From Ylistrum balloti (Eukaryota): a DNA stretch of 64,000 bases. Under the pieces are notes generated by a model, which was not told where the DNA came from, did not search any database, and saw only the letters and a program-made list of their open reading frames with translations. Both the position numbers and the translations under genes were made by a program. The first letter of the stretch is position 1, and every line of letters begins with the position of its first letter. The DNA is taken from contig NW_026782437.1 of assembly GCF_031769215.1 (NCBI RefSeq), forward strand, positions 620,001 through 684,000, read 5' to 3'. Of the stretch, positions 2,030 to 6,559 are shown in pieces.

Positions 2030-4990
2030 AAAAAACATTGATAACCTTGTAGGTCAAATTTAGATACACCGACTCGGCTTCTATCAGCAAAAATAGATTT
2101 AGTATATGTAGTATGGTAATGCGTTTTGTATCGTATGTGACAAGTTAAACTTAGTGTTGAATACTGAAATAGAATATGAAAAATTTTAAAGAAATAAAAA
2201 TAATTCAAATGCAATTGTCAAAGTGATAGAATTGATTGAAAATTCAAATTTAGTTGATATATATAGAGAACAACACCCACAGTGTAGGCGATATACATGG
2301 AGAATGTGTCCCTCCATTAAACAAGCTCGCCTAGACTTTTTTTCATTAGACCTTGCTATTTCAAATAAGAGAAAACACTATTTCATTTTCATTTCAGAAC
2401 TAACTAAACAAGAAAATATTCTTATAGAATCTATAGCAAAGCTTGAATGTGAGGTTGACTTACAGATTGAAATCTAGAAAATCAGGCAATCCAAATTGAT
2501 AGGTATTATGATAAGGTCAAAAGCGAATTGGGTTGAAGAAGGAGAAAAACCTCAAAACTGATTCCAATGTAGAAAATGGGGAAGTCGTAAGAAACAAGAG
2601 GACATTCTTACTTAAATTAAATCATTTTATGGACGACTGTTTTCTAGTGACTCTGATATTGAAGATGTGAACCTTGATCAGCTTTTGTTCTTTATAAAGT
2701 AAAATCATACAGAAGTCTTTATCACTGGTAGGAAATATTACGTATAGCGAATTTTTTAAAACAAATGAAAAATGATGAAATCCTGGTTCAGCTGGATTTA
2801 CATCAGAATTTGTTAAGCATATTTTTGGAAACAATTAGTAAAATTTGTAGTAAGATCTATTAATTATGGATATGAACATGGAAAATTATAAGTAACACAA
2901 AGACAGAAAAGTATTACATGCTTACCAAAGGGAGATAAGCCAAGACAAGTTCTGAAAAATTGGAGACCAATTTGCCTTCTTAATATTATATATAAAATTG
3001 CATACAAATCAATTAATTCAGATCAGTCAGAAATCATCTCGTGCAGATTTATAGGGAAAAAGTCAAGATTAGTATATGATGTTATGCATTATGCCGAGGA
3101 ACATTATAGGCAGGTGAGCTTTTGATTGTTGATTTTGAAGAGGCATTTGATTCTGTCATCTGGGGTTTTATTGATAAGGTATTACATTTTTAAACTTTGT
3201 GTTACAATATTAAGAGTTGGATAAAAATCTTTCATAATAACTCAATGTCTGCCATAAATTAAGGTGGTAATCCCTCAGTTTTTCCGATATTAAGAGGGGT
3301 AGATGTCAAGGTGTCCCAATTGCTCCATATATCTTTTTTATATAATGTGCGGAAACTCTTGCTATTAAACTAAGAAATAATAAGTGCATTCATGGTATAG
3401 AAATAACTAATTGTCAACTGCTAATTCCTCAATATGCAGATGATACACTTTTATTTTAGATGGAACAAAGAAATCTGGAAATTTGCAAAAATATCTGGTC
3501 TGAAAATTATTACAAGTAATATGGATAAGAGATAAAAAGTATAGTGATGAAATCTATTACCCATACCTACACATGCAATAAGGACACATTTCTACTGCTA
3601 GGCTTAGAATTTCATGTTGATTTACATCAGATACCTAAACTTAATGTGTATGATGGTAAAAGTGTGATTGTCTTATTAACTGTTATTTATCCAATAAGTT
3701 GTATAACTTACGGAAATAAATTGAATTCAATCCATCAGATGGTAAATGAAAAGTAGTAGTTAGCTTTGTGCCTATAAAGGTATACTTATCAGTTCTCGAC
3801 TTGATTCTCTTGGTTTAAACATATTTTATTGCCAAAATATATTTGAACAAGGGAATTGGGCACAAGTCATAACAACTTAATGGAGTCCTCTTCCATCATA
3901 CATTTTCAAATACATGCTTATAAAGATATAGGCTTAAACATAAATTATACATATTTAGCATTCACACACAGATATAAATACATGTATAAGAATCGTTTAA
4001 AACCTTTCCGAATCTATCCAATATTCAACAGAAAATTTGTGTTGGAAAGATGCATAGAAGAATTTGGCGACCAGAGAAAGTATTTTGAGGAACAAACACT
4101 TAGACATGTTGAAAAAACTTATTTTGGATAACAGACTTTTAAAGACAGGAGACAAAAGAATTTATTTTTTATAAGGAATGGTTCAATAAAGGTGTTAGGT
4201 TTATTCACGACATAATAAAATATTGTAATACCAGTATATTTTACACCTTGGATGAATTTATATAAAGAATTCACATAAACACAGATTTCCTCACAAATCA
4301 AGGAATTACCTGTAATATAAGGAGTATCTGGGTAGGAATATCTCAAATTGTGGCAACACACTATCCATACATACCTAAATATTTTAAAATACTTTTGAAA
4401 CATAAAATGGGGACAAAAGACTTTAATAACATACTGTATATAAACGTTACTATACCTACAAGGAAAAGCAAACGGAATGCAATGTTTAAATTTGACAAGG
4501 AAACCTTGAAACTAATATATATTACTACTTTTCGGGTGACTAACAATTCAAAATTACACTGGCTACACAGCATAGAATTAACATCAGATTTTAACATCTG
4601 ACCATTTTTAACTAAGATTGGTCTTGTGATTAGTGCATATTGCTCTCACGGTAAGACAGAAATGAAAACAACAATTCATATACTATGGTAATGTATCAAG
4701 GTCCAACATTGTATTCAAAATTTTGAACTACTTCTTGAAGTCCTTTCAATTCCATTTGCTTTTTATAAAGAAAATTCCAGTTCTGGGTTGTTGACAGTGT
4801 TTATAATAGAGTTGATAATATGATTATTTTAAATATAAAACAGCATCTTTATAGGACAAGAAGATTACTATTAATTTATCGGTGCAGACATTGGTTAAAT
4901 TTATGAGGCATACAACATGGATATACAGCTGTCAGCAAAGATGGGACATTTATTAGGAAGTTAGATAATGAATGAAATACATGGACACAA
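2030..4990 (+). mobile_element. Degenerate L1/Tx1-clade non-LTR retrotransposon ORF2 (APE C-terminus, RT, C-terminal region), many stops and frameshifts
   Basis: Fragments translate to LVDIYREQHP..YTW..KQARLDFF (end of endonuclease), IMIRSKANWVEEGEKP, LPKGDKP..KNWRPICLLNIIYK, DFEEAFDS, QYADDT (~3431) and a C-terminal region. Ends approximate. Confidence 0.85.
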
Positions 4991-5081
4991 CTGCTTGATA
5001 CCTAAATCCAGTTTTTGCCAAAATGGAATTATAAAAAATATATGATCAGCCATTTTTTATAAGTTTTTATTCGTTTTTATA

Positions 5082-5153
5082 TGATGATGATGCTGTACTG
5101 ATCATGAACATGATGAAGTTGTACTGGGCATAAGGATGATGATGTTCTACTGA

Positions 5154-5187
<34 letters not shown>

Positions 5188-5320
5188 GGTGGTGGTGGTG
5201 GTGAGGAGGAGGAGGAGGAGGTGGAGGAGGAGGATGTACTGGTCATGATGTAGAAGATTACCGTCTAGATGACGATGATGAAGATGATAATTTTGTAGTG
5301 ATGATAATGATGATGTGCAC
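5082..5320 (+). repeat. Compound trinucleotide microsatellite (GAT)n/(GGT)n/(GGA)n with TGTAC interruptions
   Basis: Directly visible; produces the spurious poly-T/I/L ORF 5077..5382(-). Confidence 0.9.
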
Positions 5321-5521: not shown

Positions 5522-5554
5522 GGCCGGTTAGCTCAGTCGGTTAGAGCGTCGTGC

Positions 5555-5588
<34 letters not shown>

Positions 5589-5639
5589 AGCGTCGTGCTA
5601 ATAACGCGAATGTCGTGGGTTCGACCCCCACACTGGCCA
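5522..5639 (+). tRNA. tRNA-Ile(AAT) gene interrupted in the anticodon loop by a 44-nt insert (T-run, A-run and 13-bp duplication); probably non-functional as a tRNA
   Basis: Removing the insert gives a 74-nt cloverleaf: acceptor GGCCGGT/ACTGGCC, D-arm GCTC..GAGC, anticodon arm TCGTG-CTAATAA-CGCGA, T-arm GTGGG-TTCGACC-CCCAC, discriminator A, TTTTT terminator at 5645-5649. AGAGCGTCGTGCT occurs at 5543-5555 and 5587-5599. Confidence 0.93.
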
Positions 5640-6559
5640 TATAGTTTTTGCTCTTTTTATTTTTTGTTTCTTTTATTGACGTCAAAAACCACAAACTACA
5701 ATTACAATTAGAGATCTCAATATTGGTCAACTGTATTTCATTCGGAACTATATTTGTTGAAGGCAATGAAAAAAAACAACTCCGTTTGTCTTCCATATTG
5801 GCTACAATTTTACTATCATCATTAACATGATTTATTTTAATAAAAATGACAGAATAAAAAAAATATTTTTTTTTTTACGTTGAAACTATATTGACAATGC
5901 TCCTAAAACAGAAACAATACTATTCTTAATTACTTTAAACTCTTTCGTGTGTTTGGAAATGTTTGTTTGTCCTGTTTATCGCCACGCCCATGGAGGTTTT
6001 CTTTGCTTTCCTCTAACCGGAGATTTACACGTTTTTTTCAGTCGGTACGTCCAGACACCCGTCCCATGTGGTCATGACTGTTGGTGTCCCCTTTAACACC
6101 CGTCCCCATGTGACCCTGGTTGTTGGTGCCTTCGTCCTCACATGACTGCAGCTGTTGGTATCTTCCTAGACTCTCGTCTTCGTGTGACCATGATTAAACC
6201 TTCAACAAATAAACAAAATATTTACATATTCATGCACGGTAATGACAAAACAAACCAATGTTGTTGTATTTTTTAAACTTAGATGTATACAATTGTATGT
6301 CAATGTAAACTTGTGTTCATGTTTGACACATCAGGGTAATGCAGTATGATGACTATGTTCTCGAGAAAAGTTCAGAAAAGTTGGGAAAATGCTCAAAGTC
6401 ATTTATAATTTACAATCATTACTGAGCTTGTGTTAACGATGGAAATGACGTATCTAAAATGTCCAATTGTAATGTCGGGGAAAAACAAGGGGAACATCTA
6501 TCGCCATTTTAATTTGCTATTCATCTTAATGATACCGAGGATTTTCTTGCATAACAAAG

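What the first reader, a model, noticed from the sequence alone, without database searches (positions are those of the whole stretch)
5522..5649. tRNA-Ile gene split at the anticodon by a head-to-head oligo(T)/oligo(A) insert with a 13-bp TSD; could encode a 5' tRNA half
Seen: an otherwise perfect tRNA-Ile(AAT) carries a T18 run then an A15 run between two copies of AGAGCGTCGTGCT. Both duplication edges are TT|AG sites on opposite strands (GGTT|AGAGC on +, TATT|AGCAC on -). Known: L1-type endonucleases nick TT|purine-rich sites, twin priming inverts 5' sequence, and some Tx1-clade LINEs target tRNA arrays or snRNA genes. Inference: this is a minimal twin-primed retrotransposition scar containing only poly(A). 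The A box (5529-5540) and B box (~5618-5628) remain, and the T-run is a Pol III terminator right after U33. The locus could therefore directly transcribe a ~34-38-nt 5' tRNA half instead of a tRNA.
Basis: partly seen in the sequence, partly recalled or inferred. Interest (0 to 1): 0.75.

Follow-up and report, generated by a model that had tools for sequence, protein, structure and literature searches.

The report
Poly(A)-only LINE scar splitting tRNA-Ile
A young isoleucine tRNA gene was broken by a jumping gene (LINE) that aims at one spot in tRNA genes and here left only a back-to-back T-run and A-run; the mishap is a known kind, in an unusually bare form.

Summary
Window 5522-5639 is a tRNA-Ile(AAT) gene. 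Its two parts, joined without the insert, equal the 74-nt intact copies of this genome exactly. It is interrupted by T17A14 (5556-5586) between two perfect copies of a 13-bp target duplication (5543-5555 and 5587-5599).

The decisive evidence lies just upstream of the window. This gene is the last of about 13 tRNA-Ile units in an array. Two other units are split at exactly the same site, with the same 13-bp duplication, by 5'-truncated poly(A)-tailed LINE copies (283 bp; 489 bp plus a 22-bp mini-insert). A fourth, decayed unit looks the same.

The two LINE families are young, with 9-13 other copies at about 100% identity. Both encode ORF2s of about 1300 aa; the 1305-aa one has an APE endonuclease and a reverse transcriptase. 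They share a 3' hairpin supported by covariation. A relative on a marine metagenome scaffold sits at the same D-loop spot of a tRNA-Gln.

The T/A insert is therefore best read as an abortive integration by this tRNA-targeting LINE machinery, with both nicked strands priming on poly(A) (twin or dual priming).

Earlier notes of this scan already record such tRNA-targeting Tx1-like LINEs on other DNA of this genome.

The parts
5522..5555 (+). 5' part of tRNA-Ile(AAT), nt 1-33 (34 letters with 20a), including the A box at 5529-5540
   Evidence: identical to the first 34 nt of the intact 74-nt copies
5543..5555 (+). Target-site duplication, copy 1 (13 bp, tRNA positions 21-33)
   Evidence: the same 13-mer flanks the LINE inserts in two neighbouring array copies
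5556..5572 (+). T17 run. Inferred to be cDNA of a poly(A) tail primed from the top-strand nick (..GCT-3' | AATAA). It also acts as a strong Pol III terminator signal right after U33
   Evidence: sequence; mechanism inferred by analogy with Meyer et al. 2010, PMC2837659
5573..5586 (+). A14 run: the ordinary poly(A) end of a target-primed insertion, primed from the bottom-strand nick at GGTT|AGAGC
   Evidence: same orientation as the poly(A) of the LINE inserts in the neighbouring copies
5587..5599 (+). Target-site duplication, copy 2 (13 bp)
5600..5639 (+). 3' part of tRNA-Ile(AAT), from anticodon AAT (5600-5602) to the discriminator base, including the B box at 5618-5628
5645..5649 (+). T5, the gene's original Pol III terminator
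   Evidence: function inferred from general knowledge of Pol III termination

Best explanation
A recently active, target-specific non-LTR retrotransposon group (ORF2 of about 1300 aa, poly(A) tail, conserved 3' hairpin; APE endonuclease plus reverse transcriptase shown for the 1305-aa family) cuts tRNA genes at a fixed spot. In tRNA-Ile(AAT) it nicks the bottom strand between D-loop position 20a and 21 (GGTT|AGAGC). It nicks the top strand 13 bp downstream, between U33 and A34 (GTGCT|AATAA). On the nicked strands both sites read ..CT|AA, and the 13-bp interval is a partial palindrome. At this locus integration aborted. The 3'-OH of the bottom-strand nick primed reverse transcription on a poly(A) tail, giving A14 next to the right-hand TSD. 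The 3'-OH of the top-strand nick also primed on poly(A), from the same RNA (twin priming) or a second one (dual priming), giving T17 next to the left-hand TSD. Neither cDNA left the tail. The two were then joined and filled in, duplicating the 13 bp between the nicks. The result is a LINE-free 44-bp scar that kills the tRNA gene. What is shown: the structure, the repeated use of the same site and TSD by bona fide LINE copies, and the enzymes encoded by those LINEs. What is inferred: the order of the nicks, priming on poly(A) at both ends, and which LINE family was responsible.
For: Structure and exact identity of the halves to intact genes. The gene is the last unit of a tRNA-Ile array at C580:599-626 kb. 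Array copy #7 (L047:2082-2451) carries a 283-bp insert ending in A13 between the same two 13-mers. Copy #10 (L047:6461-7071) carries a 489-bp insert ending in A19, then the 13-mer, then a 22-bp mini-insert (9 nt + A13), then a third 13-mer. A decayed unit at L047:~4890-5190 has a degenerate 5' tRNA part followed by an element with the same tail motif. All of these have their poly(A) toward the tRNA 3' half. The 489-bp insert is 97-100% identical (all but one at 99-100%) to 13 other genomic copies, and the 283-bp insert is about 100% identical to 9 others. RVT_1 lies 1410 bp upstream of those 3' ends, and Exo_endo_phos lies in the same open frames of up to 1305 aa. The C-terminal region is 59% identical (ins10a family, 1305 aa) or 33% identical (ins7 family, 1301 aa) to P0002, which carries zf-RVT. 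The shared 3' hairpin has compensatory changes in 3 of 12 pairs across 4 tails. A relative on a TARA scaffold has its poly(A) directly followed by a tRNA-Gln resumed at GGTT|AGCAC. L1 insertions with a 5' poly(T) that is an inverted poly(A) tail, made by twin or dual priming, are documented in primates (PMC2837659).
Against: No unique LINE sequence lies in the insert, so attribution to a LINE rests on context (same site, same TSD). No minus-oriented LINE insertion at this site was seen, so priming from the top-strand nick is otherwise undocumented for these elements. The two oligo(dT) 3' ends share no homology, so joining them needs template jumping or end joining, which is inferred. Raw reads were not examined. 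No orthologous or allelic empty site was examined; only paralogous intact genes were. T>=10/A>=10 sites are barely commoner than A>=10/T>=10 genome-wide (25 versus 19), so this is a rare accident and not a frequent product.
Confidence: 0.8

Rival explanations
1. Assembly or sequencing artefact: the real locus is an intact tRNA-Ile gene, or carries a different insert, and the T/A palindrome plus duplication arose from read or consensus errors.
For: Homopolymers and perfect palindromes are error-prone. The runs found hold only about half of the sampled words.
Against: An artefact would not reproduce the very 13-bp duplication that real LINE insertions make in two neighbouring copies. The flanks are unique and continuous.
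Confidence: 0.05
2. The scar was made by the same LINE machinery through a different path. One path is two separate poly(A)-only insertions in opposite orientations. Another is a larger twin-primed or head-to-head insertion later trimmed by deletion. A third is non-templated T-addition by the RT.
For: Repeated hits at one target do occur (triple TSD in copy #10). Near-poly(A)-only insertions occur (the 22-bp mini-insert).
Against: Two separate events should leave three TSD copies, as in copy #10, yet only two are present. A later deletion ending exactly at the T/A boundary with both runs pure is unparsimonious. Both TSDs and both tRNA halves are unmutated, so there has been little time for secondary events.
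Confidence: 0.1
3. The scar is not retrotransposon-related: a DNA-transposon excision footprint or MITE remnant with T/A termini, a polymerase-theta type templated repair scar, or an unusual tRNA intron.
For: T17A14 is a perfect inverted repeat, like minimal TIRs or hairpin-derived palindromic fill-in. Dada DNA transposons are known to target tRNA genes (PMC3706591).
Against: Dada TSDs are short: the tRNA-targeting families in that paper have a 6-bp TSD, TAGCTC, in the A box, at a different site from this one. The same site and 13-bp TSD here carry poly(A)-tailed LINE 3' ends. No other TSD-flanked T/A unit exists in the genome. By general knowledge, eukaryotic tRNA introns sit at 37/38 without duplication; this insert is at 33/34 with a 13-bp repeat.
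Confidence: 0.03

Closest known systems
L1 insertions with a 5' poly(T) stretch (inverted poly(A) tail) made by twin or dual priming (Meyer et al. 2010, Mob DNA, PMC2837659; twin priming as first described for human L1)
   Same: TSD-flanked. A poly(T) lies next to the 5' TSD and a poly(A) next to the 3' TSD. Both nicks are used as primers on poly(A). [quoted passage not shown]
   Different: Here no LINE body is left at all: both cDNAs stopped inside the tail. The enzyme comes from a target-specific invertebrate LINE, not from mammalian L1. The site is a defined position in a tRNA gene, not a loose TTTT/AA site.
Target-specific APE-type LINEs of the L1/Tx1 group (Tx1L, Keno for U2, Mutsu for 5S; Dewa, described as targeting the spacer of tRNA-Leu arrays, PMC3706591)
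   Same: APE endonuclease plus RT in one ORF2 of about 1300 aa, a poly(A) tail, and a fixed insertion site in a multicopy small-RNA gene cluster. Tandem re-insertion at one site is shown in array copy #10, and same-strand, head-to-tail-like spacing of copies occurs elsewhere in the genome.
   Different: The target is inside the tRNA coding sequence (D-loop to anticodon loop), not a spacer. Several tRNA species are hit (Ile here, Gln in a relative).
Stringent-type LINEs whose RT recognises a 3' stem-loop (e.g. zebrafish L2-type elements, PMC4176376, seen in the search listing only)
   Same: A conserved 3'-terminal hairpin maintained by compensatory changes across divergent families.
   Different: These elements also carry a poly(A) tail, and the scar shows that reverse transcription can start and end within that tail.
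Dada DNA transposons that target tRNA and snRNA genes (PMC3706591, PMC8869645)
   Same: Same strategy of hiding in multicopy small-RNA genes; tRNA-Ile is among the known targets.
   Different: Dada are DNA transposons with short (6-bp) TSDs at other positions and no poly(A). They are not involved here.

Membership tests
Twin/dual-primed LINE insertion | Perfect target-site duplication flanking the insert | tested here: met
   13/13 identical copies at 5543-5555 and 5587-5599
Twin/dual-primed LINE insertion | Poly(A) abutting the 3' TSD, with an inverted segment abutting the 5' TSD | tested here: met
   A14 next to TSD2 and T17 next to TSD1. The inverted segment consists only of tail sequence.
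Twin/dual-primed LINE insertion | LINE-derived unique sequence inside the insert | tested here: not met
   The insert is pure T17A14. Attribution rests on identical site and TSD use by LINE copies in neighbouring genes.
Twin/dual-primed LINE insertion | Empty (pre-insertion) site known | tested here: inconclusive
   Paralogous intact genes give the exact pre-insertion tRNA sequence. The flanks are unique, and no allelic or orthologous empty site could be examined.
Target-specific APE-type LINE (L1/Tx1 group) | APE endonuclease and reverse transcriptase in one ORF2 | tested here: met
   PF03372 and PF00078 hits lie in the same 1305-aa open frames, at fixed distance from the 3' ends that match the 489-bp insert
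Target-specific APE-type LINE (L1/Tx1 group) | C-terminal zinc-knuckle region (zf-RVT) | tested here: inconclusive
   zf-RVT was found in relatives P0002 and P0004. The element's C-terminal region aligns to P0002 residues 1-357 at 59% identity, but its own letters could not be fetched.
Target-specific APE-type LINE (L1/Tx1 group) | Repeated insertion at one defined sequence position | tested here: met
   Five events in three or four tRNA-Ile copies at one site with one TSD. A relative sits at the homologous D-loop position of tRNA-Gln.
Target-specific APE-type LINE (L1/Tx1 group) | Phylogenetic placement of the RT within the Tx1 clade | not tested
Functional tRNA gene | Uninterrupted cloverleaf, or a canonical intron at 37/38 | tested here: not met
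   A 44-bp interruption at 33/34 with duplication of positions 21-33. ARAGORN in default mode finds no gene.
Pol III unit encoding a 5' tRNA half | A box and B box intact and within working distance, with a T-run terminator after about nt 34 | tested here: met
   A box 5529-5540, B box 5618-5628 (77 bp apart), T18 from 5555. That this spacing is tolerated by TFIIIC is general knowledge, not tested here.
Pol III unit encoding a 5' tRNA half | The RNA is actually made and accumulates | not testable with these tools

The most novel reading that the evidence does not exclude
The scar has turned a tRNA gene into a self-contained Pol III unit. TFIIIC still binds the A and B boxes, Pol III starts at the normal site and stops in the T18 run. 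The locus would then directly encode a roughly 35-40-nt, oligo(U)-tailed 5' half of tRNA-Ile that accumulates (for example bound by La) and acts like a stress-type tRNA half. That would be a genomically encoded tRNA fragment created by a LINE accident.
Probability: 0.08. Interest if true: 0.6.

Novelty: new variant of a known kind. Interest (0 to 1): 0.45.

Why it matters
The locus is a natural snapshot of a failed LINE integration. It records both nick positions of a tRNA-targeting endonuclease and shows that both ends can prime on poly(A). It also shows that such elements can inactivate genes without leaving any recognisable transposon sequence, so repeat annotation would miss the scar. The neighbouring copies make the attribution unusually secure. 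Together they document that LINEs in this genome colonise the coding body of tRNA genes: 3 of the 15 tRNA-Ile(AAT) copies carrying the canonical anticodon-region sequence are hit. For annotation, split tRNAs of this kind are either missed or miscalled; ARAGORN called the neighbours tRNA-Asp and tRNA-Leu with giant introns. The mechanism itself (twin or dual priming) is already known, and earlier notes of this scan already describe the tRNA-targeting LINE group on other DNA of this genome. The finding is therefore a neat extreme case and not a new principle.

Tried and rejected
After that I worked beside those places.

2. One slip. The query (L047:6475-6965) started 20 nt too early. It therefore held 20 letters of a paralogous tRNA copy that are identical to window 5536-5555. 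This was unintended. Later queries used exact insert bounds.

3. Genome-wide search for sister scars. T12A12 gives 6 sites against 2 for the control. T10A10 gives 25 sites against 19. None of the others has a clean TSD or lies in a tRNA, so there is no recurrent class at this length. One site (C211:92773) has an imperfect 13-bp flanking repeat.

4. Paralogous empty site with shared flanks. None was found; the flanks match only themselves plus satellite-like repeats.

5. Fetching full-length LINE copies.

6. PF14529 does not hit these elements; PF03372 does.

7. Hits P0001, P0003 and P0005 from the representative search are low-complexity noise.

8. Intron reading, rejected: wrong position, plus a duplication.

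9. Dada or MITE reading, rejected: see the rival explanations.

10. Literature. I found no paper describing LINEs inside the tRNA coding body in bivalves. This was a limited search, so absence is not shown.

Full report
**What is there**

- A tRNA-Ile(AAT) gene runs from 5522 to 5639.
- Its first 34 letters (5522-5555) and last 40 letters (5600-5639) are separated by T17 (5556-5572) and A14 (5573-5586).
- A second copy of the 13 letters at 5543-5555 follows at 5587-5599.

Rfam's tRNA model spans 5522-5639 at 53.4 bits. ARAGORN misses the gene by default. With introns allowed it reports tRNA-Ile(aat) with a 44-nt 'intron' at position 33.

In tRNA numbering the duplicated segment is positions 21-33. 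The left edge falls at the end of the D-loop (GGTT|AGAGC). The right edge falls between U33 and the first anticodon base (GTGCT|AATAA). The joined halves are identical over all 74 nt to intact copies in the same genome. Both duplication copies and both homopolymers are unblemished, so the event is young.

**Is it more than chance?**

A perfect 13-bp direct repeat abutting a T-run/A-run cannot be chance. In the whole 648.5-Mb assembly there are only 6 T12A12 sites (2 for the reversed control) and 25 T10A10 sites (19 for the control). Among the 25, only this one has a clean flanking duplication, and only this one lies in a tRNA. The structure is real in the assembly, but it is not one of many.

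**The decisive context**

The window is C580:620001-684000. Twelve of them lie at C580:599-626 kb, so this gene is the last unit of a tRNA-Ile array.

I fetched the 30 kb upstream and annotated it locally. The array holds nine intact tRNA-Ile(AAT) genes, our split gene, and two odd calls: 'tRNA-Asp with a 296-nt intron' and 'tRNA-Leu with a 537-nt intron'. Reading these shows both are tRNA-Ile(AAT) genes split at exactly the same site, with exactly the same 13-bp duplication.

- Copy #7 (L047:2082-2451) holds a 283-bp insert ending in A13.
- Copy #10 (L047:6461-7071) holds a 489-bp insert ending in A19, then the 13-mer again, then a 22-bp mini-insert (9 nt plus A13), then a third 13-mer.
- A further, decayed unit (L047:~4890-5190) has a degenerate tRNA 5' part followed by an element with the same tail motif.

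All inserts have their poly(A) toward the tRNA 3' half. The site in tRNA-Ile has therefore been hit at least five times. Insert lengths range from 489 bp down to 22 bp, and to our 31 bp of pure tail sequence.

**What the inserts are**

The 489-bp insert is 97-100% identical (all but one at 99-100%) over its whole length to 13 other genomic copies. See the slip noted under Limits. The 283-bp insert is about 100% identical to 9 others.

Family searches of the genome place an RVT_1 domain exactly 1410 bp upstream of each of those 3' ends. They place an Exo_endo_phos (APE) domain further upstream, in the same open frames of up to 1305 aa. PF14529 does not hit them.

The first 67 codons of the 489-bp insert are open and form the C-terminal tail of ORF2. 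Searching that tail against 1.8 billion representatives found two fragments carrying the zf-RVT zinc-knuckle domain, P0002 and P0004. P0002 aligns at 59% identity with the C-terminal 357 residues of the 1305-aa frames. It aligns at only 33% with the 1301-aa frames that end in the 283-bp insert's family.

So two clearly different LINE families use the same site with the same duplication. Spacings of 5406 and 5409 bp between same-strand copies suggest a full length of about 5.4 kb and head-to-tail re-insertion.

The families share only about 60 nt before the poly(A). This stretch folds into a hairpin kept by compensatory changes (3 of 12 pairs across four tails).

**Relatives elsewhere**

P0004 lies on a TARA marine metagenome scaffold (L069). 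There the element's poly(A) is followed directly by a tRNA-Gln resumed at GGTT|AGCAC, with intact tRNA-Gln copies nearby. That is the same D-loop position in a different tRNA and a different organism.

This explains why the other genomic copies of the two families are not next to tRNA-Ile (compare): the group targets tRNA genes generally.

Earlier notes of this scan describe the following on other DNA of this genome. They call the genome a scallop; I did not verify that.

- Tx1-like LINEs inserted at a fixed D-loop spot of many tRNA genes.
- A covarying 3' hairpin.
- A classical twin-primed copy.

I treated these as leads. The hairpin and the multi-tRNA targeting were partly re-tested here, as described above.

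**Mechanism**

On the nicked strands the two edges read GCTCT|AACC (bottom strand) and GTGCT|AATA (top strand). Both are ..CT|AA, and the 13 bp between them match their own reverse complement at 8 of 13 positions. This is read directly.

In ordinary target-primed reverse transcription, the bottom-strand 3'-OH primes on the poly(A) tail. That explains A14 next to the right-hand duplication, as in the neighbouring LINE copies. T17 next to the left-hand duplication requires the top-strand 3'-OH also to have primed on poly(A).

This is the 'twin priming' variant, or 'dual priming' with a second RNA, that Meyer et al. documented for 39 primate L1 loci carrying a 5' poly(T) (PMC2837659). Here both cDNAs ended inside the tail, so no LINE body remains. 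Joining two oligo(dT) ends needs template jumping or end joining. Meyer et al. likewise saw no microhomology at that junction.

These steps are inferred. What is shown is the repeated site, the TSD, and the enzymes.

**Rivals**

- *Assembly artefact.* An artefact would not recreate the very duplication that real LINE insertions make next door. I put it at about 5%, pending reads.
- *Two separate opposite insertions.* These should leave three TSD copies, as copy #10 does.
- *Later trimming of a larger insert.* This is unparsimonious given the pristine state of the locus.
- *DNA-transposon footprints.* Dada elements target tRNAs but make short (6-bp) TSDs at other positions (PMC3706591).
- *A tRNA intron.* The position is wrong (33/34, not 37/38) and there is a duplication.

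None of the last two fits the shared LINE context.

**The 5' tRNA-half idea**

The A box (5529-5540) and B box (5618-5628) are intact and now 77 bp apart. From general knowledge of TFIIIC, that spacing should still work. T18 is a very strong Pol III stop immediately after U33. Transcription of a short, U-tailed 5' fragment is therefore mechanistically plausible, more so than for the neighbours, whose B boxes are 300-540 bp away.

Nothing here shows that it happens. No RNA runs were listed. Such an RNA could not fold as a tRNA for processing, and no conservation can be assessed. I rate stable accumulation with a role at under 10%.

**Known or new**

Target-specific APE LINEs of the L1/Tx1 group are well known. 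'tRNA genes' are listed among LINE targets in reviews, although the named case, Dewa, is described as targeting the spacer of tRNA-Leu arrays. Twin and dual priming with inverted poly(A) is also known.

What is unusual here is the bare T(n)A(n) product and its secure attribution to a tRNA-body-targeting LINE group. I class it as a new variant of a known kind, of moderate interest.

**Limits**

From then on I sent no letters of the window's tRNA to search tools, with one unintended exception: the query began 20 nt too early and included 20 letters of a paralogous copy.
Full-length elements, their 5' ends and their other targets were therefore judged from hit tables only.
- No RT phylogeny was made.

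Noticed in passing
L047:2082-2451 and L047:6461-7071 (C580:612082-612451 and 616461-617071, upstream of the window): Two further tRNA-Ile(AAT) genes are split at the same site by 5'-truncated LINE copies. One has a double hit with three copies of the 13-bp TSD. ARAGORN miscalls them as tRNA-Asp and tRNA-Leu with 296- and 537-nt introns.
   Followed up: yes
L047:~4890-5190 (C580:614890-615190): An old, decayed tRNA-Ile-like 5' part is followed by an element with the same 3' hairpin motif and a decayed poly(A). It is probably an ancient hit at the same site.
   Followed up: partly
G000 C149:738-790 kb, C1113:0-64 kb, C30:81-120 kb (hit tables only): Same-strand nests of at least four related LINE families (ORF2 of 1298-1312 aa, plus the 1301-aa family) lie here. 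Copy spacings include 5406 and 5409 bp, which looks like repeated head-to-tail insertion at regenerated targets. What the underlying target is there could not be read.
   Followed up: partly
L016 / L023 (C211:92773-92796): T18A13 is flanked by an imperfect 13-bp direct repeat (12/13, offset by 3 nt) at a non-tRNA site. It may be a second poly(A)-only double-primed scar, or chance.
   Followed up: partly
L069:1300-1480, 2057-2130, 2505-2553 (TARA metagenome scaffold): A related LINE 3' end with poly(A) is inserted at GGTT|AGCAC of a tRNA-Gln, within a small tRNA-Gln cluster of an unidentified marine eukaryote.
   Followed up: partly
window 5081-5316 and 6054-6193: The flanks of the split tRNA contain stretches 70-85% identical to tandem (satellite-like) repeats on many other contigs.
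   Followed up: no
G000 C1188:5.4-37 kb, C872, C1023 (hit tables only): Another LINE family with identical 1263-aa frames (APE hit by PF14529 and PF03372, plus RT) recurs on the same strand. Spacing is about 14.6 kb on C1188, and about 13 and 25 kb on C872 and C1023. It may be a different site-specific element in a tandem gene array.
   Followed up: no
array copy at C580:614092-614165 (L047:4092-4165): One otherwise intact tRNA-Ile(AAT) copy differs by a single D-loop substitution (C17 to T) from the other eight intact array copies.
   Followed up: no
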